A stretch of 64,000 nt of DNA from the IMG/VR virus record IMGVR_UViG_3300018962_000001, positions 140,686 through 204,685 of that record; one strand, 5' to 3'. Position 1 is the stretch's first letter. Every line of letters begins with the position of its first letter. Both the position numbers and the translations under genes were made by a program. The notes under the pieces are model-generated. The model was not told where the DNA came from and made no database searches. It saw only the letters and a list, made by a program, of their open reading frames with translations. Below, one piece after another: positions 12,001-59,101 of this stretch.

Positions 12001-15000
12001 AATCCGCACCACCCCGGTGATCACCGTCGCGATTAGTTGAATCACGCCAAGGAAGACCTCAATGATTCCGCCAAGCCCGACGATCACGCCCGGCAGCACC
12101 CCGGACAGCAGATTGATGATGAATCCCAGGACATAGAGAAACGTCGTTCCCAGAATCGTGCCCACCGTCACCAATACCGCAGCGATACCTCCTAAGATGG
12201 GCATGAGCGACCGCAGGGTATTGAAAAAGATGGTGACCAGAGGACTCAGCACCTGGAACGCGGTTTGGAGATTCGCCCAGAGGCGTCCGAACGCTAACCC
12301 AACCGCTCCCACGGCACGTTGAAAATCATGAAAGAGCGGTTGCAGGAAGGCGATGAATCGACTCCAGGTCGGCGTGACCGTGGTGTTCCAGTACTGAACA
12401 AACTCGGCGACGCGCCCCTGAATATTGCCCCAGTTCTTCAGCCACGCCACCGTTAACAGCCCGATCACCAGCGCGATCGCGCCAATCGCGAGGGTGACGG
12501 GGTTGATCGCGACCGCTAAGGCTGAGAAGATGGCTGGCCCGGTGCGGAATAGCCCCAGGAGGTTGCTGACAGGATTGGTCAGCATGGTGAGCGGGTTCAA
12601 TGCCCGCCAGATTGCGCTGAACACCGGTCCCAGCCGTGATCCCACGGCTGCCAGGACCGGGAAGCGCGTGCCGAGGGCCGTAAATAGGCCCGTAACCGTG
12701 TTGACAGGGTGGATTAACAGTTGGAATGGATTCAGGATTCCGCGCAGCGCAGGGGCTAGGGGACCAAGGTAGGTTGTCACCCCTTGGATTCCAAGATGAA
12801 TCGCACCGCCAACGCGGAAGACGGCAAAGGCCGTCCCAATCCCCGCGACGACACTGAGAATCGTCCCGCCATTGGTTTGCAAGAAGGCAAAGAAGGGCTG
12901 GATTTCGGCCCGCACCCCTTGCATCGTCGCCCGCAGATTGGCAAACTCATCGGGGAGTTGACCGAGTCCGCCGAACTCGGATTCCCAATCCACCCGTGCT
13001 TCGCCCCCCGCAGGCATCGGAGGCAGCGGGATGTCGGGAGCCGTCATGCCAAAGAGGGCAGTGACAAATTGGACAACCGCATTGCGGGCTAAGTCGATTC
13101 GCTCCTTAGCCGTATCAATCGTGGTGCTGAATGATTGCCATGCTTGTTGGCCTTGGGCCAGGCCAGTCGTGATATTGTCGGTGAGCTGCGTGATCGCCTG
13201 GGTCGCGTCACCAAAGGTCGATTGTTGTCCACGAGCCGCTTGATCGGCTGCTTTTTGCGCCTTTTCCTGAATGTTCAGGATCATCTGCTCAATTTCTGAG
13301 TACTCTTGTGATCCCTCGGCATAGCGACTGCGAAGGCCCATCAACAGCTCAAGGGCTTCGTTATATCGTCCTTGATCCGTCAGGAGGCGCGCTTGGGCCT
13401 TGATCTGCCGCTCATAGGCGTTTTCTGCCTTGATCCCCGAACTTGCGATCGAACGATCCCGCTGGGCTTGCAGACGCTCAATCTGCGCCTCGATGTTGAG
13501 CCACTCTTTCGATCCCTCGGCAAAGTGCGACTGTCGCTCCCGCAGCTTCGCAATCGCTCCATCATAATCGCCGGTTGCCTTTTCCAGATTGGCTTGCGCG
13601 GCGATCTGTTGATCCATCGCCTTCGCAGCCTTGCCGGTTGCCTCCTCCTGCAACCGTGCCCGGCGTTCTTCGAGCACCTGGATCTGGCGCAGCGTGTCAA
13701 AGTACTCCTTGCTCCCCGGCTCCAAGCCCGCCAACTTTTCGCGCAAGATGGCGATCTGCCCGTTGGTGTCCTCCAGTTCCAGGTTGTATTTTTCCTGGGC
13801 GGTTCCCACCTTGGCAGCATCGCGGGCGGCGTCCTCCGCTTGCTGGCGTTGGAGATTGGCGATCTGCTCCATGATGCGGTAGCGCTCTGCCGGATCAGTG
13901 GTTCGTTCAAGCTCCTCGTTAAGCAACGCGATTTTGCCGGGCGTATCCGCAATGGCGAGCTGGTAGTCGAGGAGGGCTTTTCGCTGCCGTTCCTGTTCTT
14001 CCGTCGCTTCACGCCGGGCTTGATTGAGTTCTCGCTCCGCTTCCAGATATTCCAGTGTGCCGGGGGTCAATTCACTTAAGCGTTGCTCTAGGATCGCGGT
14101 CTTTTCCGCCGCCGTCGCCGTTTCGAGGGCATTGCGGCGCTGCGCCTCGGCCAAGGCTTCCGCTTCTTTGCGCGACTTTTCTTCAGCCGCCGCCTGAAGC
14201 TGCGCCAACTGGGTCCGCAGCCGGTATCCTTCTTCAGACTCTTCGCCAACCGCCGCGATCCGGTCGCGCAACATTTGCTGGCGTGTTGCATCATCGGCAA
14301 TCGCGTATTGATAATCCCACTGTGCGTCCGCTAAGCGCTTGAGCCGATCTTCTTCCTTTTTGGTCCCACTTTCGCGTTCATCGGCCAGGCGATGCTCCAG
14401 GTCATAGATCTGCGCGAGAATCTTGTAGTATTCTTCACTTCCATGCTCAACATTCGCAAGTTCACCGCGCAGGATCGCCAGTTTCCCGGCAGTATCGGCA
14501 ATATGGAAGTTGTAGTCGCGCTGGGCTTTCGCGCGGCGGTTGGCTTCCAAGACCGCCTCGCGTTCCCCCGGCGTCATGCCCGGCAGCAGCCCAAGTTTGC
14601 GATCTTCATTGATCTGGCGTTGAATTTGCAGCACCTGCTCCATGAAGCGGAGTTCCCGCTCTTGGAGGCGGTCGGCGGCGGCAAATCCGGCCAAACGGTC
14701 GGCGACCACCTGCTGCTGCTGTTTCAAAATCTCAAGCTGCTGCTGGAGTTGGGTCTTTTGATCGTCTTGGGCCTGTTCCTGGGCCTCCAACATCGCCAGC
14801 TGATCGCGCGCGGCACGTTGTTGCGTAAAGGTGCGTGCGTTGCGCAGGGCACGTTCTGCCGAGCGTGTTGCTTCTTGGAGACGGCGGCGGGCGGCGGGAT
14901 CATCCAAGGCCCGCAGCTTCGCTTGCACCTCATCGATCTGTTGGGTAAGAACGGCCTGATTCAACCGCTCTTGAATACGTAGGAAGATGTCGCGGTTTTG

Positions 15001-16713
15001 TTCGCCGAGGCGCGACTCGATCTGCATCAATGATTCGGCACTGATCCTCCCCGTTTGATTGATGGAGTCGATCGCCTGCGCGACCAGTTGCGTGATCCCC
15101 GGATCTCCATTGGTGCCCACGGAGATGCGAATCGCTTCCTCAGCACTAATTTTGCCCGCCGTAACCAGCGCCGTCAGCCGATCTTGAACCTCCTCGGCGA
15201 TCGTCGTCAGTGCGCCAAAGTCCGAATCGTCCCACTCAAGATAGGCCCGGAGGACCGGACTAAACCACGTGTCAATGGTCGAGAGCGGCCCTTCTCGCGG
15301 CGGCGAGAAACCACGCAAGAACGCTTCGATCCGGCTAGTGATTGCCAGGATTGCCATCTCGACGTAGCTACTGGCTCCTGCTAACATGCCATCGGCGAAG
15401 GCTGCAATGCTGTTCACACCGCCAAGGAACAGTTCACGCGACAGGTTCTGAATCAGGCGAAGAATGAGTCCACTTAATCCCAGCAGGAGATTCGTAATCT
15501 GGGTGGCAGCCGTGCCGAAATCGCCGCTAAACAGGGAGATCAAGGCTCCCCGGAGCGGCGCGAGCGCGGCCAGCACCTGCGCTGCAAACTGGCCGTATCC
15601 TCCCACGACCCGATCCACAAAGGCCAGCGCTGGGGCGGTTGCCTGGCTGAATCCGGTTGCCATTGCCTGAACCGTGCTGATAGCGAGGCGCATGCCTGCG
15701 GCAATGCCCTGCCCCAGCGTGGCGGCGGCGGCGAATAACGCCGGGTCTTTCAGTAAATTTTCGAGGCCAACCAACTGCTCTTTGATGACATCAAAGATTG
15801 GTGCTCCGAACACGCTGCGCAGCATGAACCAGCGGTCAGAAATATTCGACAGAATACCGTCCATCGATCGGGCGGCAAGTTGGGCGGCACCGCCGAACTT
15901 CTCGGCAAGAATCTCGTTGAGGGCGGTGAGCGCCTGATCCGCCGTGCCGAGATACGTTCCCTGCGCATCGAACTTGAGTCCCTTCATCTCAAGATCGGAG
16001 CGAGTCGCAATCGCAAGCTCTCGGAGGCGGCGGAAGGCATCGCCGAAGTCACCCGTTCCAACACGAGCAATCGCGAAGGTGACTTGTTCCAATTGGCTGC
16101 TTAAATCACGGATCGCCGGACGAGTGACGACCGCTGCGTTGGCGACGTTGAGGAGAAATTCTTGCGTGCGCGCGCCAGCAACCTGGAGTTGCCGATCCGC
16201 TTCCACCAGCGCGGGCAGATCAAACGGGGTTTGCACATTAATCGCCTGCAATTCGGCAAGGCGACTTCGGGCGCGCGCGAGCATCTGCGCTGTCGTATCG
16301 CCTTCCTGTCGCAGCAGGGTCATGTAGGAGATGATGCTGTTTTCGAGTTGCTGGTTGGGACCAACCAGCCCGGAGAGTGCTGCCGAGGCAATCCGGCCTA
16401 ACTCACGGAATCCAAAGGTCAACGCGCCCACGCGCGTGATCAGGCCGACCATCCCCCCGCCTAAGACGTTGATCGACGATGACAATCCTGACGAGGTTTG
16501 CTGGGCACGGACGAACGTGTCGCGAAGCACGGAAGCCAGGGTTCGGGCTGACGCGGTAAGTGAACTCATGGATCGCGTGCTCGTCTGCGTGTTGACGTTA
16601 AACCCCTGGAGCTGTGATCCAAGCGCTTGAAGATTTGACCCGATGGCGCGGAGGGCGTTCAGCGCCGACTGGGCATTGCCCGTAAAATTTAAGAGAACCT
16701 GAATTTGATTCAC
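9070..16713 (-). CDS. Tail tape measure protein (2547 aa) with C-terminal M23 peptidase and SLT lytic-transglycosylase domains
   Basis: Start re-assigned to GTG 16713 (AAGGAGG RBS). N-terminal tape-measure domain, long helical repeats, HEGID...YAHL...HLHY (M23), ESGWNP..INLWDSN..G.PS.GL.Q (SLT). Confidence 0.9.
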   Translation of the reverse strand: MNQIQVLLNFTGNAQSALNALRAIGSNLQALGSQLQGFNVNTQTSTRSMSSLTASARTLASVLRDTFVRAQQTSSGLSSSINVLGGGMVGLITRVGALTFGFRELGRIASAALSGLVGPNQQLENSIISYMTLLRQEGDTTAQMLARARSRLAELQAINVQTPFDLPALVEADRQLQVAGARTQEFLLNVANAAVVTRPAIRDLSSQLEQVTFAIARVGTGDFGDAFRRLRELAIATRSDLEMKGLKFDAQGTYLGTADQALTALNEILAEKFGGAAQLAARSMDGILSNISDRWFMLRSVFGAPIFDVIKEQLVGLENLLKDPALFAAAATLGQGIAAGMRLAISTVQAMATGFSQATAPALAFVDRVVGGYGQFAAQVLAALAPLRGALISLFSGDFGTAATQITNLLLGLSGLILRLIQNLSRELFLGGVNSIAAFADGMLAGASSYVEMAILAITSRIEAFLRGFSPPREGPLSTIDTWFSPVLRAYLEWDDSDFGALTTIAEEVQDRLTALVTAGKISAEEAIRISVGTNGDPGITQLVAQAIDSINQTGRISAESLMQIESRLGEQNRDIFLRIQERLNQAVLTQQIDEVQAKLRALDDPAARRRLQEATRSAERALRNARTFTQQRAARDQLAMLEAQEQAQDDQKTQLQQQLEILKQQQQVVADRLAGFAAADRLQERELRFMEQVLQIQRQINEDRKLGLLPGMTPGEREAVLEANRRAKAQRDYNFHIADTAGKLAILRGELANVEHGSEEYYKILAQIYDLEHRLADERESGTKKEEDRLKRLADAQWDYQYAIADDATRQQMLRDRIAAVGEESEEGYRLRTQLAQLQAAAEEKSRKEAEALAEAQRRNALETATAAEKTAILEQRLSELTPGTLEYLEAERELNQARREATEEQERQRKALLDYQLAIADTPGKIALLNEELERTTDPAERYRIMEQIANLQRQQAEDAARDAAKVGTAQEKYNLELEDTNGQIAILREKLAGLEPGSKEYFDTLRQIQVLEERRARLQEEATGKAAKAMDQQIAAQANLEKATGDYDGAIAKLRERQSHFAEGSKEWLNIEAQIERLQAQRDRSIASSGIKAENAYERQIKAQARLLTDQGRYNEALELLMGLRSRYAEGSQEYSEIEQMILNIQEKAQKAADQAARGQQSTFGDATQAITQLTDNITTGLAQGQQAWQSFSTTIDTAKERIDLARNAVVQFVTALFGMTAPDIPLPPMPAGGEARVDWESEFGGLGQLPDEFANLRATMQGVRAEIQPFFAFLQTNGGTILSVVAGIGTAFAVFRVGGAIHLGIQGVTTYLGPLAPALRGILNPFQLLIHPVNTVTGLFTALGTRFPVLAAVGSRLGPVFSAIWRALNPLTMLTNPVSNLLGLFRTGPAIFSALAVAINPVTLAIGAIALVIGLLTVAWLKNWGNIQGRVAEFVQYWNTTVTPTWSRFIAFLQPLFHDFQRAVGAVGLAFGRLWANLQTAFQVLSPLVTIFFNTLRSLMPILGGIAAVLVTVGTILGTTFLYVLGFIINLLSGVLPGVIVGLGGIIEVFLGVIQLIATVITGVVRIVAGIIYGFYTGDWQPLWQAVGDFVQGIIDSVVSIFTGAVTTVIGLAVGLWEGVKNAFYQLWVDLVGHSIIPDMVNGIVRWFQNLWDWGLAKIQGLADAMLQTIRWMVGTWTPGGGGLLGLLATLVDTALTNIERWIGAYQQGGMLGLIRTLADDYLAAIRWMVGTYASGQNGVLGWLYWLVNEGLDALIAWVGSDSAAGSMLGTIQRLANGFFRLIGELVGRYASGGGGVLGLFWGLINDTSRTVKQWIGLSDTSGDSLIGQVAQLVVNLPNLIRNNLVGTYTVGGPGVLGLFANLVEGGKTAMRDFVGTWDDRGNGVLNGGYRAWKGMSDRISEIKEAILAPFVGAANEIGTIMKKMANTAIGPADGSSGLNAAIKGFEFFVNKFRDAINWIAEKLGAAAPLPDTFNLPTIPQYARGTRRGYHPGGPAIVGEKGPEIVMLPRGSTVLPHQETARLRRRGLLPGNYPAYELGIGDAIGDVINWISQGAGWVLDRGLSAVGFESFDFAGDAFAGVGTAIFGKVKEWALALVEGLLRAFEDAQVGTDVYDAAEFMVGSREIVSWWGDARPDTTGRHEGIDILADEGTIIRALESGVVSYQGWNGFGGNYIQIRGQSGREHYYAHLVDPANFRAGQQIERGYDIGNVGHTPYRDGEMVDHLHYQISDKRGNWVDPKLELAAFLRELRGVTQDTPDPRGGEYWPGTPGPARSWISEALAGAAVTRDWLQGLSILGKYESGWNPRSINLWDSNFRAGYPSRGLAQTIPQTFNANKRASARAYTGDLGYANGRDLGNPGDIYDPIENLIAAINYIKRRYGHIRDLPGVQSVMRGGGWVGYATGGVIREPVTGIGAHTGTNYLLGEAGPEVVVPVDRLRERLARLRAAMEDQLVALTQELEHGLLDRSLGGGAATFDRFRAQTAAPALAAVATRLNLPPITYAPTYQIEGVNYTLDQIARMIDARQEEAWAGFLRDLRAAGYI

Positions 16714-16725
16714 GGTTGTCCCTCC

Positions 16726-16754
16726 TTGCCGAAGGGACGAACGTGATCTACAGT
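16726..16754 (+). promoter_or_regulatory. Putative SigA promoter for the isolated pentamer tract
   Basis: TTGCCG-N17-TACAGT; lies immediately next to the tape measure RBS on the opposite strand. Confidence 0.5.
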
Positions 16755-16765
16755 GCGGTGAACGC

Positions 16766-16845
16766 GGCCTGGATCGGCCTGAGACGGCATCGACGGGCAA
16801 GGCACGGTTGGGCTATCCGTGGCTAGGTATGGTTGGGCGTGGCGC
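16766..16845 (+). ncRNA. Isolated GGY-NN pentamer tract (16 phased units); candidate stand-alone guide RNA
   Basis: GGCCT GGATC GGCCT GAGAC GGCAT CGACG GGCAA GGCAC GGTTG GGCTA TCCGT GGCTA GGTAT GGTTG GGCGT GGCGC, between a promoter-like element and a terminator. Confidence 0.7.
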
Positions 16846-16880
16846 AGCACCTCACATGTGTGAGGTGCTGTTTGATTCTT
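16845..16880 (+). terminator. Intrinsic terminator
   Basis: 11 bp perfect stem CAGCACCTCAC-ATGT-GTGAGGTGCTG followed by TTTGATTCTT. Confidence 0.8.
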
Positions 16881-17029
16881 GGGATGCCAACGGTGCCCCA
16901 TCCGAGCCTCGCACGATACGGATCATGTGTCGGATGGGCGAGCACGGGGGAATGGTGGCCCATATAGGAGAAGTCGGGGCAGATGCGCGGACTTCTGCCC
17001 CGTAGTATAGCAAAGACCAGCGGCGTCGT

Positions 17030-17221
17030 CTAGGATGGGTCGGTGGGGGACTCCCACGGGAAGGGAATCCCATTGGCGAGAAAATACTTCCGCCAAAACT
17101 CGGTGTCGAAGGGATGGCGATCCGGCGGCGGCGGCGTGAGATGGCGCGTCTTAATGGCTGCCGCGATTGCCACCAGCGAACGGTAGATCACGGCCCAGAA
17201 CAAGCGATCGGCGTTCTTCAT
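17030..17221 (-). CDS. Hypothetical protein, 63 aa (MKNADRLFWAV...)
   Basis: AAAGGAGG RBS before ATG 17221. Confidence 0.65.
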   Translation of the reverse strand: MKNADRLFWAVIYRSLVAIAAAIKTRHLTPPPPDRHPFDTEFWRKYFLANGIPFPWESPTDPS

Positions 17222-17231
17222 TGTTCCTCCT

Positions 17232-18239
17232 TTAAGGAGCAGTGCGCTCCGCTGCTTCGATGGTGTGAATCCCGGTGAGAAGTTGATAATACGCCAAGCT
17301 TCCAGGCTGAAATAAGAGCAGATAGCCTTGGAGCAACTCTTTCCGCGTGGCACGCGCGGGTTCTAAGGTGATGCGTGCTCGAATCAGCGCCATCCGTTCG
17401 TCATCCGTCAACTGCGGATCGGCCAGCCGATCTTCAAGCAGCAGGATCTTCTGGACGCGCGCAGCGGCAGCGAGGGCCATTGTGGTCGGCGAGATGATCG
17501 AGTCGGAGTCGTCCTCCGGTGGCGTATAAGGCCGGGGGGCAGCTAATCGGGTGGTTGGCCCCGTCGCCGGACGCAGACGTTGATAAATCTCGACCCACGA
17601 CAGGCCCAACCGCCGGAGTGCGAGGATTTCCGCACGCCGGTTCGGCAGATTCTGATAGGCCACCGACTGACGCAGATCCTCCCAGAGCGGCTGAATCTCG
17701 CTGAACCACTGCTGACGGCGGAGAACATCCTGTGGCCCCGGATCAAGCACTCGCACCTCCTCCGGCCAGAAAGCAATCGCCTGATCGATCTGGAGATTAA
17801 TGAGTCCCAGTGGCACGCCCGCAGCATCGCACTCAACACCATCTTGATCGATCCACGGCTTGTGCGGTGATCGCCGGATGAGATGGGGTTTCGTTCCCTG
17901 GATGACCGGGAAGATCGCCGGATCGAGTGGGGGGACAAAGGCCGCATGCGACGTGGGATCATCCACGCGGGCCAGATCTGGGATCGTGTGCCCACACCCG
18001 GAACAAAACTTCGCACCGGGTTCGATTCCACGATACCCACAGCGGGTACACTGATTTGCTGCGCGCGCGCGCTGTAGGCACTGATTTGCGAGCAATGTCC
18101 GGGACCGAAACTCTGCCAGATCAGATCGATAGAGCAGGGTGGTCCGGTAGGCTGCATACAAGGTCGCCATCAGGACTCCTACCTGAACTCCCTCACTCGA
18201 AAGATGGAATAGGAGATCCACGAACCAATCATTCATCAC
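17232..18239 (-). CDS. 335 aa protein with N-terminal hydrophobic segment, double zinc ribbon and a possible HTH
   Basis: CTRC...CSGC; RRAEILALRRLGLSWVEIYQRL; overlaps the HTH gene stop. Confidence 0.7.
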   Translation of the reverse strand: MMNDWFVDLLFHLSSEGVQVGVLMATLYAAYRTTLLYRSDLAEFRSRTLLANQCLQRARAANQCTRCGYRGIEPGAKFCSGCGHTIPDLARVDDPTSHAAFVPPLDPAIFPVIQGTKPHLIRRSPHKPWIDQDGVECDAAGVPLGLINLQIDQAIAFWPEEVRVLDPGPQDVLRRQQWFSEIQPLWEDLRQSVAYQNLPNRRAEILALRRLGLSWVEIYQRLRPATGPTTRLAAPRPYTPPEDDSDSIISPTTMALAAAARVQKILLLEDRLADPQLTDDERMALIRARITLEPARATRKELLQGYLLLFQPGSLAYYQLLTGIHTIEAAERTAP

Positions 18240-18451
18240 TCCTCCCGTTCCTCCGGCGGCGGCGGCGCGAACAATGCCAGCAACGGCACACCGAGCGCGG
18301 CAGCCATTTTGTCAAGCGATCCGATCGTTAACGTCTCGACGTGGCGATTATGCCAGGCTTTGCGAACCGTCCCCACCCCCAGATCGGCCCGTCGTGCCAG
18401 CTTCGAGATATTTAACGCCTGGGCGGTGGCGATAACAGCTACTTGAAACAT
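18236..18451 (-). CDS. Cro/C1-type (XRE) HTH regulator, 71 aa
   Basis: ISKLARRADLGVGTVRKAW...LDKMAAALGV pattern; AAGGAGG RBS; divergent from the RAMP locus. Confidence 0.85.
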   Translation of the reverse strand: MFQVAVIATAQALNISKLARRADLGVGTVRKAWHNRHVETLTIGSLDKMAAALGVPLLALFAPPPPEEREE

Positions 18452-18491
18452 TCGATCCTCCTTCCTCGTGTGGAGCGCGCATCATTGTGCA

Positions 18492-18580
18492 TTGACAGAC
18501 CGCATATCTATGTTATACTGTCATTATAATGTATAGTATATAGAGTATAGCATACAAAACCTATGCTACATTATACTCCC
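18492..18580 (+). promoter_or_regulatory. SigA promoter and inverted-repeat operator region upstream of the pentamer array
   Basis: TTGACA-N16-TATACT with extended TG; AT-rich island with TATAATGTA/TACATTATA and TAGCATA/TATGCTA inverted repeats. Confidence 0.7.
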
Positions 18581-18624
18581 ACTCCCGGCAGAATGCTAGA
18601 CATTCGACAGATGAATTCGGACAT

Positions 18625-19025
18625 GGTTGGGTGTGGATTGGCTAGGCTAGGAGAGGCACGGTGAGGTCTGGCACGGATGACTCTGCACTGAGTCCAATCC
18701 CTTCGGGGTATCTGGGTATGGCATGGGAACGGTTGGGTCCGGTAAGGATCGGCTGGGAGCGGCAAGGTGTGGCAAGGTCGGGCTGGGCCGGGCAACGCAG
18801 GGCACGGATGGCGGTGTATTCCGCCACCATTCCCCACCAGGGGAATACGAGGATGGCTGGGCGCGGGCATGGCGAGGCGTGGCAAGTCGAGGCTGGGCCG
18901 CGCTAGGTGCGGCAAGGCACGGATGATCGTGGATTCGATCACCATCCCTCACACGAGGGTTATTTGGCTCGGATCGGTCAGGATTGGCTAGGTCAGGTGG
19001 GGCTGGGTGAGGCTTGGTTTGGTAC
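18625..19025 (+). ncRNA. Upstream array of four GGY-NN pentamer tracts separated by double hairpins (candidate guide-RNA array)
   Basis: Tracts at 18625-18679, 18715-18810, 18855-18925 and 18966-19025; the first three end GGCAC-GGATG plus a stem-loop. Confidence 0.85.
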
Positions 19026-19038
19026 AAGGAGCAGTATG

Positions 19039-19674
19039 ATGGCATCCAACATGATTCAAGCGACGGTTGAGATCCAGGGAACGAAGCCACTGTTGTGGCA
19101 CGCCTTTACGCCCGACAGCATTCCGGCGGACGGCAAGAAGGAAAAGACCGGGGTGGCGGGTAACGATCCCCAGGAATGGCGGCGATCCTTCCTGGCGGAT
19201 CACGAAGGCCGCTTGTTTGTGAACCCGGAATACATCTTCGGCTGCCTGCGCGATGGCGCGCGACACACCAAAAAAGGCCGTGGATCGATTATGTCGAATG
19301 TGGCGGCAACGCTTCAGATCGTGGACGAGCGGATCTACACCGATCGCTATTTCCCACGCAACGGCGCGACTGGCCCCTTTGATCCGGCATCGGCGGATCG
19401 CCCGCCGATCGAGATCACCGAGCCGGTTTATCTCGACGTGCGATCGGTGAAGAACCCGTCCACGAAAGGTCGGAACGTCCGCTACCGGGTGGCGGCGAGT
19501 CCAGGGTGGCGGGCGAGCTTTACGATTCTGTGGGACAAAACCATTGTCAGCCGCACCGAGATGGAGGCGGTCATTACTGATGCGGGCCGACTCGTCGGGC
19601 TGGGTGATGGCCGATCGATCGGCTTTGGTCGATTCATGGTGGTGCCAGGGTCCATCACGTTTACCGAGGTCTAG
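19039..19674 (+). CDS. Stand-alone RAMP/Cas7-like protein (211 aa), Vipr-like candidate
   Basis: N-terminal beta-strand VEIQGTKPLLWH and C-terminal glycine loop GRLVGLGDGRSIGFGRF characteristic of RAMPs; AAGGAG RBS at 19026 (alternative ATG 19036). Confidence 0.8.
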   Translation: MASNMIQATVEIQGTKPLLWHAFTPDSIPADGKKEKTGVAGNDPQEWRRSFLADHEGRLFVNPEYIFGCLRDGARHTKKGRGSIMSNVAATLQIVDERIYTDRYFPRNGATGPFDPASADRPPIEITEPVYLDVRSVKNPSTKGRNVRYRVAASPGWRASFTILWDKTIVSRTEMEAVITDAGRLVGLGDGRSIGFGRFMVVPGSITFTEV

Positions 19675-19684
19675 AGTCTTTCGA

Positions 19685-19743
19685 GGCGAGGCATGGTGAG
19701 GTGAGGTATGGGGTGGTTGGCGAGGTACGGCCTGGCAAGGAGT
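19685..19743 (+). ncRNA. GGY-NN pentamer tract between the RAMP and HNH genes
   Basis: GGCGA GGCAT GGTGA GGTGA GGTAT GGGGT GGTT GGCGA GGTAC GGCCT GGCAA GGAG; the end doubles as an RBS. Confidence 0.75.
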
Positions 19744-19749
19744 TTGAAC

Positions 19750-20067
19750 ATGGGCATGAAACGACAACCTCCGAAGATCTGGGAAGGAACCCGCAAACGA
19801 ATATTCGAACGCGATCGGGGGATCTGCCAATCTCCCCTGGCTCCACCCCTGTGTCAAGGGAAACGCGGCGAGTTAACGCTTGCCACGGCGCATATCGACC
19901 ACCGGCGAAGCGGTCGGTTTGGCACGAATGCGGATAGCAACCTCCGGGTGCTCTGCCGCGCGTGCCACGTCCTCCGCGACGATCCGCGCCACCGAGGCAT
20001 GATCGGCGGAGCCTTGCGCGACGGGATCATCCCTCCCCATTGGCGGGAGCTAACCTGGGGAGAGTAG
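19750..20067 (+). CDS. HNH endonuclease, 105 aa
   Basis: IFERDRGICQ..C...HIDH...G.N..SNLRVLCRACH; AAGGAG RBS 7 nt upstream. Confidence 0.85.
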   Translation: MGMKRQPPKIWEGTRKRIFERDRGICQSPLAPPLCQGKRGELTLATAHIDHRRSGRFGTNADSNLRVLCRACHVLRDDPRHRGMIGGALRDGIIPPHWRELTWGE

Positions 20068-20289
20068 ATGGGTCGTCCAAGGCACAGAACGGGTGCCGTG
20101 CGCCAGCTGCCGTGGCGCAGAGTCGTCACGGCAGCACGTGATGGCGGAATCATGGGGGCGGTGCTGGGAGGGGTGTTCTTTGGCCCTTCTGGCGCGCTGG
20201 TGACCAGCTTAGTAGGAGCGGTGGCAGCGGCGGCGGTTCGCTGGTATCGAAGCGTCAAGGCGAGAGGTCGCATGGGAAGGCATGGATGA
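20068..20289 (+). CDS. Small putative membrane protein, 73 aa
   Basis: Abuts the HNH stop; Gly-rich hydrophobic segment GAVLGGVFFGPSGALVTSLVGAVAAAAV. Confidence 0.55.
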   Translation: MGRPRHRTGAVRQLPWRRVVTAARDGGIMGAVLGGVFFGPSGALVTSLVGAVAAAAVRWYRSVKARGRMGRHG

Positions 20290-20640
20290 TCGTGGATCGA
20301 TCCCACTTCTCGGTTGGGCAAGCGAGGGTCTGGCAAGGACAGGCAAGGCTTGGCTCGGCAGGGTCGGGTTCGGCTGGGCAAGGATACTGGTGTTTCCAGT
20401 ACCATCGATTGGGTGTGGCGGGGCGGTGGTAGGGTGGGGCTTGGCTTGGTCCGGCACGGCAGGGATGATGGTGTCTCCATTCCACCTCATGGTCGGGCGA
20501 GGAGGGGCGAGGCAGGGCTAGGCGGGGCAAGGTGAGGCCCGGCAAGGTTCGGCACCGATCCTCGTGTCATCGAGGCCACCACGGGGTATGCCGAGGCGTG
20601 GTAAGGTGAGGCTAGGCTGCGGTGAGGTCCGGCGAGACGG
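20259..20640 (+). ncRNA. Downstream array of GGY-NN tracts (one degenerate plus four)
   Basis: Tracts at 20259-20288, 20312-20386, 20412-20467, 20491-20560 and 20585-20640, with TG-loop hairpins after the first four. Confidence 0.85.
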
Positions 20641-20642
20641 GG

Positions 20643-20673
20643 AACAGGACGGGTGCTGGTCACCCGTCCTGTT
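20643..20673. terminator. Hairpin at the convergence of the pentamer array and the tail chaperone genes
   Basis: AACAGGACGGGTG-CTGGT-CACCCGTCCTGTT perfect 13 bp stem. Confidence 0.75.
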
Positions 20674-21145
20674 GATTCTCCGGTGCCTGGTCGGCGAACT
20701 CATCAACCTTGTTGGCACGTTTGTAGGCTTGCCAGAAGGCTGACTGCATCGGCGGCGGCGGCGGCGGGGCGAATGGATCTTGATAGACCTTCTCAAACGG
20801 CGGCAGCGCCTGCGGTTTCTTGCCACCGAACGCGGGTCCAAGGACGCGGGCCAGGGCGGTTTCGAGGGCCATAATCTGACTCATTTGCTGGTCCCAGCGA
20901 TTCCGCGCGACCTGCTGGTACTCGCGATGGAGTCGCCGCCACCGCCAGCCCAGCACCTCCTCCAGGGGCAAATGCCGGGTTGCCACGATCTCGGTCACCA
21001 TGTCGTCGATCAGGGTGCCAATGGCTCCTATGATGTCGAAGGCGAGTTGACCACCGTTGCGCCAGCTGGTGGTGGAGTCTTGGCCGGTTGTTGATTGCGC
21101 TTGCCCCACAGCTCCACCGCTTGCCGGGCGAGCGTGAAGTTTCCC
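20660..21145 (-). CDS. Tail assembly chaperone, frameshifted C-terminal part (gpT-like)
   Basis: The -1 frame is open from the slippery site G GGA AAC (21145-21139) to the stop at 20660. Confidence 0.75.
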   Translation of the reverse strand, partial: GKLHARPASGGAVGQAQSTTGQDSTTSWRNGGQLAFDIIGAIGTLIDDMVTEIVATRHLPLEEVLGWRWRRLHREYQQVARNRWDQQMSQIMALETALARVLGPAFGGKKPQALPPFEKVYQDPFAPPPPPPMQSAFWQAYKRANKVDEFADQAPENQQDG

Positions 21146-21693
21146 AGTGCCGCTGCCAAGTCTTCGGACTGCCGGATGCGCCAGGCCAGTGCCTTCACAA
21201 TCGGCGCGACCTTTACATCGTCCTCCGACAGCTGCCGGAAAAACAACTCCGCCTCTTTCTTCTGGTGATCCTTGCCACCGAACAACACGATCGCGGCAAT
21301 CCGCAAAAAGTGTTGCACATTGATGGTTGCAAGCAAGGCGAAGATCGTGGCTTCAAATGGCTGCGCCGACTGGACCTTGCCGTTCACCAGCGCTGTAAAC
21401 GCACTGCCCAGCTGCCCGGCGAGGTATTTTTCAGCCCGCAACGACACGTCCCCAATCACATTACACAGTGCCAAGATCGCGTGAATATCGGGTTCTCCGA
21501 TCTCAAAGACTCGTCCGCCAAAGGTGACTCGATAGTCCACCACTTCCTCGACCACCGCCTCCGTAGGCCCGTCCTCGGCAGCTGGTGGAAACAAGGGTTC
21601 ATCGGGCGCAGCGATCGGTTCCGATCCCCAGAGCGATTGGTCGTTGGGCAAGGGAGCCTGGCCCCCCAGGTCGAAGCTATTGCCGTCTGCCAT
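21028..21693 (-). CDS. Tail assembly chaperone (gpG-like), 221 aa
   Basis: Follows the tail tube gene; contains an in-phase slippery heptamer. Confidence 0.8.
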   Translation of the reverse strand: MADGNSFDLGGQAPLPNDQSLWGSEPIAAPDEPLFPPAAEDGPTEAVVEEVVDYRVTFGGRVFEIGEPDIHAILALCNVIGDVSLRAEKYLAGQLGSAFTALVNGKVQSAQPFEATIFALLATINVQHFLRIAAIVLFGGKDHQKKEAELFFRQLSEDDVKVAPIVKALAWRIRQSEDLAAALGNFTLARQAVELWGKRNQQPAKTPPPAGATVVNSPSTS

Positions 21694-21705: not shown

Positions 21706-22371
21706 TTAGGTAAGCTCAAACAAGAGTCCGAAGTCCGAGCCGTCCGTGACGCCGGGATCGGGCAGGATGTTAAAGCTAAACTCGTTCGTGGTCGTGCCAC
21801 GCGATTGAATTTGGAAGTCTCCGGCGGAGGCGATCCGCGCTTTCCGCAAGAAGAACATGCGAATCTTGCCGGTCACATCATTTTGCTGGAGCACCACCAG
21901 CGGGCGCTCGATCAAGGCAGATGGCGCACCAAGCCCTACCCGTCGCTGCGCAGCGTTGGCGGGCGTCCCGCTCGGGTTTGCGGAAATCGCGGTGATCGCG
22001 CCGAGTGCCCACAACCATTTCATACGGTCGAGACTGGTATCCATACTGGTCCCGCCGAGCGTCATGGCAAAGTTATTCGGACGACCGCCGCGCAGCGGAT
22101 AATCGCGTTGATCGATATTGATGCCGTCTTGTATATCAAAGCTGCGACCGAGCGTAATTCCATCCTCACTGGTCGCCCCGAAGTCATGATAGCCATCTTC
22201 CAGGGCGTAGCTCGTCAGATTCAGGATGTCCTCAATGTAGCGCGGCACCGCCTGAGTCGGCACCGGCGTTTCCGGCGCGACCGCGGCATAAACGAGGCGT
22301 GCCCCGCCTTGCCAGATGCGCGCATCTGCGCTGGCATCAATACTAATGGCACTAACCAGTTGCGTTGCCAT
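21706..22371 (-). CDS. Major tail (tube) protein, 221 aa
   Basis: FGATSEDGITL...IDQ...MTLGGTSMDT pattern; position before the chaperones. Confidence 0.8.
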   Translation of the reverse strand: MATQLVSAISIDASADARIWQGGARLVYAAVAPETPVPTQAVPRYIEDILNLTSYALEDGYHDFGATSEDGITLGRSFDIQDGINIDQRDYPLRGGRPNNFAMTLGGTSMDTSLDRMKWLWALGAITAISANPSGTPANAAQRRVGLGAPSALIERPLVVLQQNDVTGKIRMFFLRKARIASAGDFQIQSRGTTTNEFSFNILPDPGVTDGSDFGLLFELT

Positions 22372-25393: not shown

Positions 25394-26455
25394 CTAGATC
25401 GTTGGAGCCGTATAGGTTGCGCCCCCAACATAGAGGACGGCCCCGTTCGTCCTATTCCAGACCCCGATCCCAAACTCCCTGTCCATCGTCTGGGCGCGCA
25501 GTGGATAGTGCTCGTGGTCGGCAGCAATCGTCAGATCCCCGGCGAGACCACCATCACGGGTGCGCAGCACCAGCGGTTTCAGCGGCGAGGCGGCATCGAA
25601 GCAGAAAAGGTAGCCGGATGGAACCCACGGCTTCACCCACACCTCCGCTGGCCCGAAGATCCCGATGGCGCGGTTATACATCGTGCCCATATCGAGAGTC
25701 CGACCCGGTGCGGTTCGCTCGTTGGCTCCCGGCTGAATCCGCATATCGAAATAGGGCGTGAAGTTCGAGAATGCCCGGAACGTGGCTTCCGACGCGCGAT
25801 TGATATACAGCCGGACCCCTACGCCAAACCCGTGCTCGACCACCGTCTCAACCACGTTCAGCGCTGCCGCTTCGGTCAGCGTGGTGGTTGCGAGGTAGTG
25901 GGTATGTGTGCTTGAATCAAACGGCTGCCCGTAGGGATCGTTGGGGATGGCCGTCCCATCCGCATTGACCAACGCCCGCAGCGGCACGTTGACGTTATCC
26001 ACCAACCGATCGATGTAGGCAAGGTTGTTCGTTGGGGTAAATAACGCACGCTTAATCTGCCGTTGGATATTCCGAATATCCGCCGTGCGGGCCGCGACAT
26101 ATTGTGCGTCCAGCTCGGCGACGGTTCGGTTCATCATGTAGAGTCGCGTCCATTGAATCGAGTACTGGAACAGGCGCATCGGAAAGCCCACGGTAACACC
26201 GGCGGCGATCTTCTGCGCGTCTGCCGTGCCGTACTCGTCAACTTCGACCATCTCGCCCTCGGCCACGCCACCGTAGCGGCGCTGGCGATCGACGGTCGGA
26301 TCGACCAGATCCCCGATCATTTCGCGCACAATCATATTGTGGGCATCGAGGTTGGCTTGAATCGCGGCGAACGCACGGTCCTCCCCAAACTGCGCAATCG
26401 TCTGATTGGCGGCCTGGGTGTCAAGGACCTGTAAGGTACCGTATGAGGTTGCCAT
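25394..26455 (-). CDS. Major capsid protein, 353 aa
   Basis: Size; position after scaffold and decoration genes; EVDEYG, FPMRLFQYSIQWT, REFGIGVWNR motifs consistent with an HK97-fold MCP. Confidence 0.85.
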   Translation of the reverse strand: MATSYGTLQVLDTQAANQTIAQFGEDRAFAAIQANLDAHNMIVREMIGDLVDPTVDRQRRYGGVAEGEMVEVDEYGTADAQKIAAGVTVGFPMRLFQYSIQWTRLYMMNRTVAELDAQYVAARTADIRNIQRQIKRALFTPTNNLAYIDRLVDNVNVPLRALVNADGTAIPNDPYGQPFDSSTHTHYLATTTLTEAAALNVVETVVEHGFGVGVRLYINRASEATFRAFSNFTPYFDMRIQPGANERTAPGRTLDMGTMYNRAIGIFGPAEVWVKPWVPSGYLFCFDAASPLKPLVLRTRDGGLAGDLTIAADHEHYPLRAQTMDREFGIGVWNRTNGAVLYVGGATYTAPTI

Positions 26456-50144: not shown

Positions 50145-51788
50145 CTATCCTCCTGCCGATCCGCGCTGCCCGCTTGTTTGATCTGCCGCCGCGGTCTGAT
50201 CCGCCGTTTCGGCAGCCGCCGCCGCCGCCGCCGCCGCCTGGGCCAACAGGCGCTGACTCGCACTGGTTTTCTCGGTCAGCGGGTTGGCCGATCCCGCTGC
50301 CCCCGCAATCCGCCCTGCCTGGAGGGCGGTTTGGACCCCAGCGCGATCGGCTTCCAACTCCAACCGGGCACGCTCGTATTCCAACTGCTCCAACGCCGTG
50401 AGCGCCACCAACGGGCGTGGCATGATCTCATGATCCAGCTCACCACGGGCATAGCTTTCGAGATCGAAGGGCAGGAACTTCTTTTGCTGGCGCGTGAGCT
50501 GGGCAGGCGTGGCCGACCAGGCTCCCGAGTTGGCGCGAAAGCCGCCCATTGCGACCGCCATCTGCTGCAATTTCATCATTTGCTGATCGTAGTTTGCCTG
50601 CGCCTCCAGCACCGTGCCCGACACATCGCCCATCAAGCGAATCGCCGCCGGACCCGTGACCTGACTCATCGCGCGGAGTTCCCGATACATCGACAGTTCC
50701 GGGTGATCATGCTCGATCTCGGCCAACAAGGACTCAATCCAGGGCAGCGCTTCCGCCGGATTGAGTTCGCCCAGCAGGGACTCGACCTTCCCACCGATCG
50801 GTCCCTTCAGCATCAGCACGGAATCGCGATCGGTATTATCGGGCAGATCAATATCCACCTTCTGCTGCTCGGTGTCGCGATTCTTCCGCGCGCCGAAGAT
50901 GTTGGTAATCGATCCTCCCGACCAAAAAACGACCGGGTTGGCGATCGCTTTGTGCATCTGATCGTGAATATGGGCGGCCATACTATTCAGCTGGTCGAGC
51001 TTCCCGATCGCCCGAATCGCCGGAGCGCCAAAGTCTCCGCCGAGATCGACATGCTTACACCACACTGCCGGAACAAACCCGTACGGATTCTCGATCTCAG
51101 GCGGCGTGCCGTCATAGCTGAACAGCTCGTGATTCCGAAGCGTGCGAATGGATTCCTTGGAGACTTCCTTGGTGTACACATAGGGGGTGCCGTCCGGGGC
51201 CAGCGCCCGGTATTCCATTGCATAAAAGAGGACGTTGCCCGTCGCATCGAGCTGGAGATCATCGCGGACCAGGCCCGGCCACACAATATTGCGGGTGATC
51301 TTGCCGCGATCCAGCTCATCGAGGAGCTCGACCAACACATCCCCACTACACCCGCCATACCGGACCAGCACCGACTTTCCCGCTTGCCAGTTCGCCCATT
51401 GCCACCATTGGCCGATCGCGTGTTTCAGGGCTTCGGGCGTATCTTCGGCCAACGGAATCGCCAGGGGCACGCCATCAGGAAGGCGGGACCCATCGATCGC
51501 CAGCACGCCCGGATATACCTGGGCGGCGTAGAAATCCACCAGTCGCCGTACCGGGTTGTACAGAATGCGCGTTTGTTTGTAGAGGCGATACTGGCTTTTA
51601 TACCGTGCCCATTGTGCGGCGGTGGTGGCGAGATCTTCGAAGGCCTCATTCCGATACCAGGACCAATACAAGGCATATTGATCGATTCGTCCATTAAACG
51701 ACCCTCGCCCGGCGGCGGGTTGCCCCGCACTCCCTGGATCAGCAAGGCGCTGTCGAAACGCCGTCAATCCTGCGCGCGTTGCTGCCAT
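50145..51788 (-). CDS. Portal protein (SPP1 gp6-like), about 547 aa
   Basis: YNPVRRLVDFY, ENPYGFVP.V...H, D.LN motifs and size; GGAGG RBS at ATG 51788. Confidence 0.8.
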   Translation of the reverse strand: MAATRAGLTAFRQRLADPGSAGQPAAGRGSFNGRIDQYALYWSWYRNEAFEDLATTAAQWARYKSQYRLYKQTRILYNPVRRLVDFYAAQVYPGVLAIDGSRLPDGVPLAIPLAEDTPEALKHAIGQWWQWANWQAGKSVLVRYGGCSGDVLVELLDELDRGKITRNIVWPGLVRDDLQLDATGNVLFYAMEYRALAPDGTPYVYTKEVSKESIRTLRNHELFSYDGTPPEIENPYGFVPAVWCKHVDLGGDFGAPAIRAIGKLDQLNSMAAHIHDQMHKAIANPVVFWSGGSITNIFGARKNRDTEQQKVDIDLPDNTDRDSVLMLKGPIGGKVESLLGELNPAEALPWIESLLAEIEHDHPELSMYRELRAMSQVTGPAAIRLMGDVSGTVLEAQANYDQQMMKLQQMAVAMGGFRANSGAWSATPAQLTRQQKKFLPFDLESYARGELDHEIMPRPLVALTALEQLEYERARLELEADRAGVQTALQAGRIAGAAGSANPLTEKTSASQRLLAQAAAAAAAAAETADQTAAADQTSGQRGSAGG

Positions 51789-51981
51789 TAAGCGCCTCCC
51801 CACTGCTGCTGGTCGATCTTGCACCACCGTCGCTCCTACTCCGTCCCGGAGTGCTAGGTTGAAATAGACCATCCGGTACGGTGGGGGGCGCGCAGGCGCA
51901 CGCAGAGTGGTCGGTGCCTATAGCATACCAAAGAAACGCGCTCCGGCATAGTCGGAGCGCGTCAGTCGGGAGAGGAGCGTG

Positions 51982-58250: not shown

Positions 58251-58389
58251 TCAAAATCTAGTAAAAATAGCGGCGGATTTTGTATAGATATATTAACTAT
58301 ATCTAGGCGGATCGGGCGCGCTAGGCGGCGCGCTAGGGGCGATAGGGGCGCTATCCGCGCCCCTATACGCGATCGGGGGATACGCGGCG

Positions 58390-59043: not shown

Positions 59044-59101
59044 TTCCGTATCCCCTAGATACTAGGCCGCTATCGGTAGCGGCGATTCATTTGATAGCGG
59101 T

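What the first reader, a model, noticed from the sequence alone, without database searches (positions are those of the whole stretch)
19750..20067. HNH nuclease inside the RAMP-pentamer operon: possible effector
Seen: a compact HNH with Zn-binding cysteines lies between the two arrays, co-oriented and with a pentamer leader. Knowledge: small HNH proteins in phages are often terminase cofactors or homing relics, but HNH domains also serve as effectors fused to some Cascade subunits. Inference: it could add cleavage to an otherwise binding-only RNP; no terminase is nearby.
Basis: partly seen in the sequence, partly recalled or inferred. Interest (0 to 1): 0.6.

Follow-up and report, generated by a model that had tools for sequence, protein, structure and literature searches.

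The report
HNH nuclease partner of phage VIPR
The small HNH nuclease is real and is the conserved accessory gene of a VIPR system, a recently described CRISPR-like RNA-guided DNA-targeting system carried here by a 205-kb phage; it most likely lets the guide complex cut the DNA it finds rather than only silence it.

Summary
Window 19750-20067 (+) encodes a 105-aa HNH nuclease with all catalytic and Zn-binding residues. It sits between two arrays of GGY/NN pentamers and is preceded by a pentamer leader. The terminase gene is more than 48 kb away.

The "RAMP-pentamer operon" is a VIPR system, described in 2026 bioRxiv preprints. The RAMP family profile matches the solved SUSP1 Vipr protein (E 3e-10).

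- An orthologous HNH lies directly downstream of Vipr in 93 of 108 related loci.
- Reciprocally, 35 of 37 clade HNHs have Vipr directly upstream, and 0 of 27 weaker HNH hits do.
- The two proteins co-diverge (Mantel r 0.67).

So the HNH is the Vipr-accessory protein (Vap) of what the preprint most likely calls type III.

New observations here:
- The system sits in a complete jumbo-phage genome and carries about 10 guide units; most relatives have one.
- Two guides match, by the published 1-nt-skip rule and with the skipped base at the codon wobble position, the catalytic-motif region of ImmA/IrrE metalloprotease genes on other viral contigs.
- The last pentamers of the leader guide form the HNH Shine-Dalgarno sequence.

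Guide-dependent cleavage is inferred, not shown. A predicted Vipr-HNH complex gets only weak support. This is a new member of a known kind.

The parts
16796..16871 (+). Solo guide unit S0: 10 GGYNN pentamers followed by a 12-bp hairpin terminator. It lies outside the main operon, opposite in orientation to the flanking genes.
18236..18451 (-). Divergent Cro/CI-type HTH regulator (HTH_26, E 1.6e-5), the likely regulator of the VIPR promoter. Analogous divergent HTH genes occur in at least 16 related loci.
18492..18519 (+). Sigma-70-like promoter, TTGACA-16-TATACT, 11 of 12 consensus positions, with a TG extension. It lies in an AT-rich divergent control region.
18625..19025 (+). Upstream vrRNA array with units A1-A4 (11, 19, 14 and 12 pentamers). 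A hairpin spacer of the form GGAU-stem-loop-stem-CC follows each of A1-A3, and the stems differ in sequence but keep pairing. A4 runs straight into the vipr Shine-Dalgarno sequence. A2 matches ImmA/IrrE genes.
19039..19674 (+). vipr: a 211-aa single-RRM RAMP protein, the guide-binding filament subunit. An alternative start is at 19036.
19685..19743 (+). Leader vrRNA unit L (7 + 4 pentamers). Its last pentamers, GGCAA-GGAGT, form the Shine-Dalgarno sequence of the HNH gene. This is the canonical guide position in this clade.
19750..20067 (+). HNH nuclease, 105 aa, the Vipr-accessory protein (Vap). This is the finding.
20068..20289 (+). 73-aa glycine-zipper membrane ORF. Its start abuts the HNH stop codon. 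It is not conserved in any related locus, so it is probably a passenger gene. Its 3' end overlaps a guide remnant, B0, at 20274-20311.
20312..20635 (+). Downstream vrRNA array with units B1-B4 (15, 11, 13 and 8 pentamers). B1 matches ImmA/IrrE genes.
20643..20673 (.). 13-bp hairpin closing the operon, shared with the convergent tail-chaperone gene. The 65-nt stretch 20626-20690 that contains it folds at -36.6 kcal/mol (z -3.8).

Best explanation
The locus is a VIPR (Viral Interference Programmable Repeat) system, and the HNH is its accessory nuclease (Vap).

Proposed sequence of events:
1. A repressor-controlled promoter at about 18.5 kb transcribes the guide arrays, vipr and the HNH gene as one unit.
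2. Vipr protomers polymerise on each GGY/NN pentamer tract. They hold the GGY triplets and present the NN dinucleotides.
3. The filament recognises double-stranded DNA that reads xNNxNN..., skipping one base per pentamer, and forms an R-loop/triplex.
4. The 105-aa HNH, with an intact active site and a clade-specific C-terminal helix, is recruited to the target-bound filament. It nicks or cuts the DNA, turning silencing into destruction.

At least two guides are aimed at ImmA/IrrE-type metalloprotease genes of other mobile elements.

Status of the steps. Shown here: the identity of the parts, the obligate Vipr-HNH pairing, and the target matches. Taken from the preprints, which worked on other VIPR types: filament formation and the DNA-recognition rule. 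Inferred: transcription as one unit, HNH recruitment and cleavage.
For: - Vipr identity: the family profile hits PDB 36pp 'SUSP1 Vipr protein' at E 3.2e-10 over its full length. The AF2 model (pLDDT 83.8) hits Csm3/Cmr4/Cas7.
- Pairing: an intact HNH lies directly downstream of Vipr in 93 of 108 loci. Reciprocally, 35 of 37 HNH hits at E<=1e-17 have Vipr directly upstream, and none of 27 weaker HNH hits do. Mantel r 0.667, 0 of 999 permutations reach it.
- No third conserved gene.
- Pentamer arrays adjoin the pair in 90 of 93 loci.
- Catalytic and Zn-binding residues are invariant.
- Complex prediction: weak support, median score 0.54 against best control 0.26, runs agree in at least 94% of contacts, partner pLDDT at least 88. 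That mark was reached by 58 of 80 solved complexes and 2 of 110 mismatched pairs, but scores of 0.60 or under by only 7 of those 80 and by both mismatches that passed.
- The guide rule works here. The A2 core has 28 exact IMG/VR hits, all at R-F-T-L-A-H-E-[LF]-G-H of Peptidase_M78 ORFs with the skipped base at the wobble position. B1 has 2 exact 24-base hits in Peptidase_M78 ORFs, extending to 27/30 and 25/30 NN (shuffle maximum 23). Five other guide cores gave 0 hits.
- Preprints 10.64898/2026.04.26.720920 and 10.64898/2026.04.26.720927 list HNH and other nuclease accessory genes and predict target destruction.
Against: - There is no biochemical or RNA evidence for this locus. No RNA run holds it.
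- The complex score is weak by the tool's own calibration, and no interface was reported.
- In the characterised type II systems the Vipr-vrRNA complex alone represses targets, and their accessory protein is a DNA-binding protein. A non-cleaving role therefore cannot be excluded.
- True full-length targets were not found. The matches cover 10-13 of 19 pentamers for A2 and 12 of 15 for B1.
- Assignment to the preprint's type III is by elimination from its text, because its figures and tables were not available.
Confidence: 0.6

Rival explanations
1. The HNH is an accessory of the VIPR system, but target binding switches on non-specific or collateral DNA degradation or nicking, an abortive or host-shutoff type of effector, rather than a site-specific cut at the guide's target.
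For: The fold search returns Cap5, a ligand-activated indiscriminate HNH DNase, among the closest structures. The protein is tiny and has no obvious specificity domain. The obligate pairing fits this reading as well as the main one.
Against: Nothing here distinguishes it from site-specific cutting. A phage that carries an indiscriminate DNase would need self-protection, and no immunity gene is conserved in the locus.
Confidence: 0.12
2. The HNH is a selfish homing or mobility endonuclease that travels with vipr and spreads the cassette. It has no role in guide-dependent interference.
For: Free-standing HNH genes in phages are often homing enzymes (general knowledge). The cassette sits in very different contexts: a tail module here, and next to integrases, Cro/CI genes, R-M genes and a CRISPR array elsewhere.
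Against: - The gene order is fixed and the two proteins co-diverge (r 0.67) across phyla.
- The HNH clade is found essentially only next to Vipr.
- The HNH start region is built into the guide RNA in 27 of 61 loci that have an array between the two genes.
- Only 3 of 96 copies are disrupted.
Homing genes are typically sporadic and decay-prone.
Confidence: 0.08
3. The HNH acts on RNA or on gene expression, either by maturing vrRNAs out of the polycistronic transcript or in a regulatory role, and does not act on target DNA.
For: Guides are embedded in the same transcript as the genes and must be released. The leader guide abuts the HNH start codon.
Against: In SUSP1, vrRNAs co-purify with Vipr expressed from a construct carrying only vrRNA1 and vipr (10.64898/2026.04.26.720927, methods). 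Every sequence or structure relative found is a DNA-acting HNH nuclease.
Confidence: 0.07
4. The HNH is a catalytically silent DNA-binding accessory that stabilises the silencing complex, as Vap1 appears to do in type II systems.
For: Vap1, a predicted DNA-binding protein, enhances VIPR protection, and SUSP1 needs it to fend off its satellite (10.64898/2026.04.26.720920; 10.64898/2026.10.15.759431).
Against: D50, H51, N64 and H73 and the Zn-binding cysteines are invariant or nearly so in 40 diverse orthologues. That degree of conservation is not expected for a dead enzyme.
Confidence: 0.05
5. The HNH is the packaging cofactor of the phage terminase (HK97 gp74 / GVE2 type).
For: The nearest sequence relatives outside the clade are genome-end HNH genes of Burkholderia siphophages and the phage GVE2 HNH 5h0m.
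Against: - The terminase gene is more than 48 kb away.
- Those matches cover only residues 11-76 and lack the C-terminal extension.
- Orthologues sit beside restriction-modification, ATPase and CRISPR genes in isolate and MAG genomes, with no packaging gene noted among the neighbours examined.
Confidence: 0.02

Closest known systems
VIPR systems with a nuclease accessory gene (most likely 'type III' of bioRxiv 10.64898/2026.04.26.720920)
   Same: A Vipr RAMP protein, GGY/NN pentamer guide RNA and a two-gene operon with an HNH accessory. Guides match viral sequences. Orthologues in isolate genomes sit beside R-M, OLD-like ATPase and CRISPR genes.
   Different: - This copy lies in the tail module of a complete 205-kb phage genome, not in a host defence island.
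- It has about 10 guide units in three positions. The type appears to be described as single-guide, and 53 of 93 relatives have one block.
- The type assignment is by elimination from the text, because the figures were not available.
Type II VIPR (Escherichia phage SUSP1, Pseudomonas fulva prophage)
   Same: Homologous Vipr (E 3.2e-10 to PDB 36pp), pentamer guides with 3' structured tails, the 1-nt-skip and wobble-skipping target rule, and phage-borne location.
   Different: - The accessory protein there is a DNA-binding Vap1, not a nuclease.
- The demonstrated outcome there is transcriptional silencing.
- The guide tail there is a pseudoknot; here it is a simple hairpin with covarying stems.
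- tblastn with this Vipr finds nothing in 50,697 GenBank phage records.
HNH-Cascade (type I-E / I-F variants with Cas8-HNH or Cas5-HNH; PDB 8yb6, 8zp7)
   Same: A RAMP-filament guide complex that gains DNA cutting from an HNH module. These entries appear among the fold matches.
   Different: The HNH there is fused to a Cascade subunit. The guide is contiguous with 6-nt periodicity. CRISPR arrays and adaptation genes are present. This is an analogy only.
HNH domains of Cas9 / IscB, and TasH of TIGR-Tas
   Same: A beta-beta-alpha-metal HNH that cuts DNA within an RNA-guided complex. There are weak profile hits to IscB (NCBIfam 5.9e-5; PDB 9nvu, 9k2z) and Cas9.
   Different: Those are domains inside large single effector proteins. 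Here the HNH is a free-standing 105-aa protein.
Phage packaging HNH (GVE2 HNH 5h0m; HK97 gp74-like genes at siphophage genome ends)
   Same: The closest sequence relatives of the catalytic core.
   Different: Here there is no terminase adjacency, there is a clade-specific C-terminal extension (R-H-R-G-M-I...W-R-E-L-V-W), and Vipr is an obligate neighbour.

Membership tests
VIPR system | A Vipr protein: a single-RRM RAMP with a G-loop, homologous to the described Vipr | tested here: met
   The profile of 30 family members hits PDB 36pp_D 'SUSP1 Vipr protein' at E 3.2e-10, residues 8-193 against 5-190. The AF2 model hits Csm3/Cmr4/Cas7 at E about 1e-7.
VIPR system | Adjacent tandem GGY/NN (YNNGG) pentamer tracts, at least 4 units and typically 9-16, on the gene strand | tested here: met
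   There are 10 units of 8-19 pentamers, all on the + strand, and none elsewhere in the 205 kb. 90 of 93 related loci have such tracts.
VIPR system | A minimal operon of vipr plus one accessory (vap) gene, with no cas genes or CRISPR array of its own | tested here: met
   Vipr-HNH is the only conserved pair. There are no CRISPR-like repeats in the island.
VIPR system | Guides specify DNA by the NN dinucleotides with one skipped base per repeat, the skip falling on codon wobble positions | tested here: met
   Guides A2 and B1 match Peptidase_M78 genes exactly over 20-26 and 24 specified bases. Frame offset is 0 in the long Peptidase_M78 reading frame wherever one spanned the hit.
VIPR system | vrRNAs are expressed, processed and bound by Vipr as an RNP | not testable with these tools
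   Only DNA runs from a biocrust metagenome hold the locus.
VIPR type III (as inferred from the preprint's text) | The accessory gene is a predicted nuclease (HNH) | tested here: met
VIPR type III (as inferred from the preprint's text) | Single-vrRNA architecture and defence-island location | tested here: not met
   The window has about 10 units and lies between the tail-chaperone and tape-measure genes of a phage. Relatives do mostly meet this feature. The definition itself is inferred from text without the figures.
HNH (beta-beta-alpha-metal) nuclease | Catalytic His, Asn and metal-binding His, plus a CxxC-type zinc site | tested here: met
   D50-H51, N60/N64, H73, C26, C35, C69 and C72 are invariant or at least 90% conserved. 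Pfam HNH scores at its cut-off.
Terminase-associated HNH (HK97 gp74 type) | Encoded next to the terminase genes or cos end | tested here: not met
   The only Terminase_6N match is at genome position 4155-4781, more than 48 kb away.
Homing HNH endonuclease | Sporadic presence among close relatives and independence from neighbouring genes | tested here: not met
   93 of 108 loci carry the HNH and 35 of 37 clade HNHs have Vipr upstream. The two proteins co-diverge.
CRISPR-Cas Cascade-HNH | A CRISPR array with about 6-nt guide periodicity, several Cas subunits, and an HNH fused to Cas8 or Cas5 | tested here: not met
   Here the repeats have 5-nt periodicity, there is a single RAMP gene, and the HNH is free-standing.

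The most novel reading that the evidence does not exclude
A jumbo phage carries a nuclease-armed, multi-guide VIPR as an offensive weapon. It cuts, rather than merely silences, the ImmA/IrrE (anti-repressor or defence-regulator protease) genes of resident prophages, ICEs or host defence modules. This would run against the preprint's view that nuclease-bearing VIPRs are host-immunity systems.

In addition, the HNH Shine-Dalgarno sequence is made of the last pentamers of the leader guide. Vipr loading on that guide would therefore gate how much nuclease is translated, coupling the nuclease dose to RNP assembly.
Probability: 0.3. Interest if true: 0.65.

Novelty: new member of a known kind. Interest (0 to 1): 0.5.

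Why it matters
VIPR is a months-old discovery, and its authors state that the role of nuclease and helicase accessory genes is unknown. This locus and its roughly 90 relatives give a clean, minimal test case. A 23-kDa Vipr, a 12-kDa HNH and a roughly 60-100-nt guide may together make an RNA-guided DNA cutter much smaller than Cas9 or Cascade.

The locus also shows that the nuclease-bearing form is used by phages themselves. It links the form to a concrete class of targets, the ImmA/IrrE induction and defence-regulator proteases. That makes the biology of this phage-versus-mobile-element conflict directly testable.

Tried and rejected
- Rfam at E<=1 over 16.5-21.5 kb gave only a meaningless miRNA hit. 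There is no hammerhead between guide units. No tRNA or tmRNA genes were found.
- Self-targeting: no guide matches the phage's own 205 kb above the shuffled controls.
- Cross-targeting: 128 guides from related loci against 1.8 Mb of fetched sequence gave nothing at skip 0, 1 or 2. The skip-3 'hits' were the same contigs fetched twice.
- Exact 1-nt-skip searches for guide cores A4, B1 (10-pentamer core), A1, B3 and A3 in IMG/VR, and for A4 (12 pentamers) in metagenome contigs, gave 0 hits. These serve as empirical nulls for the A2 and B1 hits.
- Reads: the only runs are DNA contigs from one biocrust study. The second sample holds identical fragments, so guide variation could not be seen and expression could not be assessed.
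- GenBank phages hold no tblastn match to this Vipr clade.
- Foldseek of the HNH model gave only weak E-values (>=0.028), although every hit was an HNH nuclease.
- Complex prediction for Vipr + HNH gave weak support only: 0.54 against best control 0.26. This mark was reached by 58 of 80 solved complexes and 2 of 110 mismatched pairs, but at 0.60 or under by only 7 of those 80 and by both mismatches that passed. No interface was given.
- The window's membrane ORF, Zn-ribbon ORF and HTH gene have no tblastn counterparts in any related locus, so they are not counted as core parts.
- Terminase-cofactor and homing-endonuclease readings were considered and rejected on context.

Full report
**1. The observation**

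The window is the last 64 kb of a 204,685-bp IMG/VR virus record rated 100% complete, from a biocrust metagenome. Structural genes run on the minus strand:
- a 2,576-aa ORF at 9070-16800, taken as the tape-measure gene from its size and position (no family scan was run on it);
- two ORFs at 20660-21693, taken as tail chaperones from their position (no family hits);
- major tail protein at 21706-22371;
- major capsid protein at 25394-26455.

A 3.9-kb island is wedged between the presumed chaperone genes and the tape-measure gene. Its plus strand carries, in order:
- a strong promoter, TTGACA-16-TATACT, at 18492-18519;
- four pentamer tracts at 18625-19025;
- a 211-aa gene at 19039-19674;
- a pentamer leader at 19685-19743;
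- the 105-aa HNH ORF at 19750-20067;
- a 73-aa membrane ORF;
- four more pentamer tracts at 20312-20635;
- a hairpin terminator.

The HNH call is sound. Pfam HNH scores at its cut-off and PHROG HNH families score down to 8.6e-9. Profile hits reach the phage GVE2 HNH, McrA, IscB and Cas9 HNH domains. The AF2 model has pLDDT 87, and every fold match is an HNH nuclease. C26, D50, H51, N60, N64, C69 and H73 are invariant in 40 orthologues, and C35 and C72 are at least 90% conserved.

The pentamer periodicity is not chance. All blocks in the 205-kb genome lie in this island, on one strand, and there are none in shuffles. The only terminase match is more than 48 kb away.

**2. What the operon is**

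The 211-aa protein belongs to a family of more than 2,000 proteins with no Pfam domain. Members are about 60% identical across Acidobacteria, Chloroflexota, Armatimonadota, Bacillota, Cyanobacteria and Chlamydiae.

A literature search for pentanucleotide repeats with HNH in phages led to the 2026 preprint that defines VIPR systems (10.64898/2026.04.26.720920). According to that work:
- a phage-encoded RAMP protein, Vipr, polymerises on guide RNAs (vrRNAs) made of alternating GGY/NN motifs;
- the complex recognises dsDNA through the NN dinucleotides, skipping one base per repeat;
- loci are two-gene operons of vipr plus an accessory gene (vap);
- some types carry predicted nucleases or helicases, and an HNH is shown in its figure S21.

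The family profile built here hits the solved SUSP1 Vipr protein (PDB 36pp) at E 3.2e-10 over its full length. The model hits Csm3/Cmr4/Cas7.

**3. Is the HNH really part of it?**

- In 108 loci fetched with the Vipr profile (48 IMG/VR, 60 GTDB genomes), 93 carry an intact orthologous HNH (38-62% identity) directly downstream and co-oriented. Three more carry disrupted copies.
- The rest are truncated contigs, a divergent clade of about 40% identity with other or no small downstream genes (L040-L046), or one exception (L029).
- Reciprocally, a scan of IMG/VR with the HNH profile returned 37 strong hits (E<=1e-17). Of these, 35 have Vipr directly upstream, one is cut by the contig end, and one (L129) has none. 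None of 27 weaker HNH hits has a Vipr.
- Pairwise distances of the two proteins correlate (Mantel r 0.667; 0 of 999 permutations reach it).
- No third gene is conserved. The commonest neighbours are divergent Cro/CI-type HTH genes, excisionase-like HTH_17 genes and integrases.
- Pentamer tracts adjoin the pair in 90 of 93 loci: between the two genes in 56, downstream in 44 and upstream in 7. The median tract is 15 pentamers, and 53 loci have a single block.
- Cyanobacterial copies use GTYNN-type pentamers.

**4. Type and context**

The preprint says types II, VI and VII carry DNA-binding accessory genes. It says types III-V carry enzymes, that III and V are the only nuclease-bearing types, and that those two are enriched in defence islands. 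[quoted passage not shown] By elimination, the HNH belongs to type III. I could not see the figures or tables.

Orthologues in isolate or MAG genomes do sit in such neighbourhoods:
- next to HsdM in Paenibacillus;
- next to an OLD-like ATPase and an HD protein in Bacillus;
- next to a caspase-domain protein and a DUF3854 protein in Nostoc;
- abutting a long RT-Cas1/Cas6 CRISPR array in an Anaerolineales MAG.

The window's copy differs. It lies inside a complete jumbo-phage genome and has about 10 guide units, the most seen in this sample. The next highest is 6, in L037.

**5. Guides and targets**

Units A1-A3, B1 and B2 end with ...GGAU followed by a hairpin. The hairpin stems differ in sequence but keep pairing: UGGCGG/CCGCCA, UGAUCG/CGAUCA and UACUGG/CCAGUA.

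Applying the published rule, in which each GGY is replaced by one wildcard:
- No guide matches the phage itself.
- The 10-pentamer core of guide A2 has 28 exact matches in IMG/VR. Five other guide cores gave none.
- All 28 A2 hits lie antisense at the peptide R-F-T-L-A-H-E-[LF]-G-H. Wherever a long reading frame spanned the hit, it was 170-360 aa with the skipped base at the codon wobble position. In six contigs the match extends to 13 pentamers.
- The five of these ORFs that were scanned are Peptidase_M78 (ImmA/IrrE) proteins, two of them with an N-terminal XRE HTH.
- Independently, the first 12 pentamers of guide B1 match two metagenome contigs exactly, extending to 27/30 and 25/30 NN against a shuffle maximum of 23. 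These matches are again antisense and wobble-skipping, in 407- and 408-aa Peptidase_M78 proteins, just before their HExxH motif.

ImmA/IrrE proteases are the anti-repressors that trigger induction of some temperate phages and ICEs, and relatives such as CapP regulate defence systems (my own knowledge). This parallels the preprint's finding that natural guides aim at lysogeny-switch genes of rival elements. The full-length natural targets are not in the collections searched.

**6. How the HNH most likely works**

- Shown: it is an obligate, co-evolving, active-site-intact partner of Vipr.
- Taken from the literature on other VIPR types: Vipr-vrRNA filaments bind dsDNA and form an R-loop triplex.
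- Inferred: the HNH docks on the target-bound filament and nicks or cuts the DNA.

A two-chain prediction gave weak support: median score 0.54, best control 0.26, runs agreeing in at least 94% of contacts, partner pLDDT at least 88. The tool's calibration warns that passes at 0.60 or under are weak.

The clade-specific C-terminal extension is absent from the packaging-type HNH matches and forms helices 79-90 and 98-101 in the model. It is a candidate docking element; this is inference.

There is one further design feature. In 27 of 61 distinct loci with a guide between the genes, the pentamer tract runs to within 9 nt of the HNH start codon. Its terminal GGCAAGG(A/G) pentamers then serve as the Shine-Dalgarno sequence, as they do in the window (GGCAA-GGAGT, 6 nt, ATG). 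Vipr loading on that guide could therefore limit HNH translation. This is a hypothesis only.

**7. Rivals**

All of the following are less likely than the main explanation, for the reasons given under Rival explanations:
- collateral DNase activity;
- selfish homing endonuclease;
- RNA maturation;
- catalytically silent DNA binder;
- terminase cofactor.

**8. Novelty and verdict**

The kind of system, and the existence of HNH accessory genes within it, are already described in 2026 preprints. The finding is therefore a new member of a known kind.

What this analysis adds:
- a quantified obligate Vipr-HNH pairing;
- a phage-borne, multi-guide example;
- two guide-to-target assignments to ImmA/IrrE genes, which extend the 1-nt-skip rule to the HNH clade;
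- the guide-embedded ribosome-binding site.

The effector function of the HNH remains open and is directly testable. No step needed referral. None of the sequence was taken for human.

Noticed in passing
window 16796-16871 (+): A solo guide unit of 10 GGYNN pentamers followed by a strong hairpin terminator. It lies outside the VIPR operon, between the tape-measure gene start and a Zn-ribbon gene, and on the strand opposite to its neighbours. It overlaps the nominal TTG start of the 2,576-aa ORF, so the real start of the tape-measure gene is probably further in.
   Followed up: partly
window 20274-20311 (+), inside the 73-aa ORF 20068-20289: A remnant guide end of 3 pentamers plus a hairpin. 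It is 92% identical to the 3' end of unit A3 (repeat family D6). This suggests array growth by duplication, and raises doubt about whether the membrane ORF's 3' end is coding.
   Followed up: partly
window 16800-20660: The whole island splits the junction between the presumed tail-chaperone genes and the tape-measure gene, which is usually contiguous. It holds the solo guide, a 335-aa Zn-ribbon protein, an HTH gene, the VIPR operon and the membrane ORF. The Zn-ribbon ORF (17232-18239) overlaps the HTH gene by 4 nt and has no family beyond weak zinc-ribbon hits.
   Followed up: partly
window 58300-59500: A dense cluster of G+C-rich tandem repeats (periods 9, 12, 15 and 22 nt at 58315-58827), plus a 56-nt unit repeated 3.3 times at 59299-59480. 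Its nature is unknown; it may be an origin or a regulatory region.
   Followed up: no
window 28553-33613 (-), 478-7185 (-), 50145-51872 (-): Very large ORFs of 1,686, 2,235 and 575 aa with no Pfam hit, and no PHROG hit for the two that were scanned against PHROGs, 1,686 and 575 aa.
   Followed up: no
L110 10001-16000 (Anaerolineales MAG): A Vipr-guide-HNH cassette directly abuts a long CRISPR array (37-nt repeat, period about 75-80 nt, at least 11.3-14.9 kb) that belongs to an RT-Cas1/Cas6 locus. On its other side is an integrative element with a serine recombinase and a primase-like gene. This bears on the proposed VIPR-CRISPR evolutionary link.
   Followed up: partly
L091-L101, about 6630-6725 (Nostocales genomes): These copies use GT[CT]NN-type pentamers instead of GGYNN (about 15-18 units), and the tract overlaps the start of a longer HNH of about 125 aa.
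   Followed up: partly
L129 4001-4288; L028, L063, L081: One clade HNH has no Vipr within 4 kb upstream (L129). Three HNH copies are broken: in-frame stops in L028 and L081, and fragments in L063.
   Followed up: no
L071-L083 (Chloroflexales), about 40 nt before the HNH start: In this subclade a G+C-rich hairpin lies between the guide tract and the HNH gene, instead of the guide-embedded Shine-Dalgarno sequence. Oscillochloris sp. ZM17-4 and a Chloroflexales MAG each carry four copies of the cassette.
   Followed up: no
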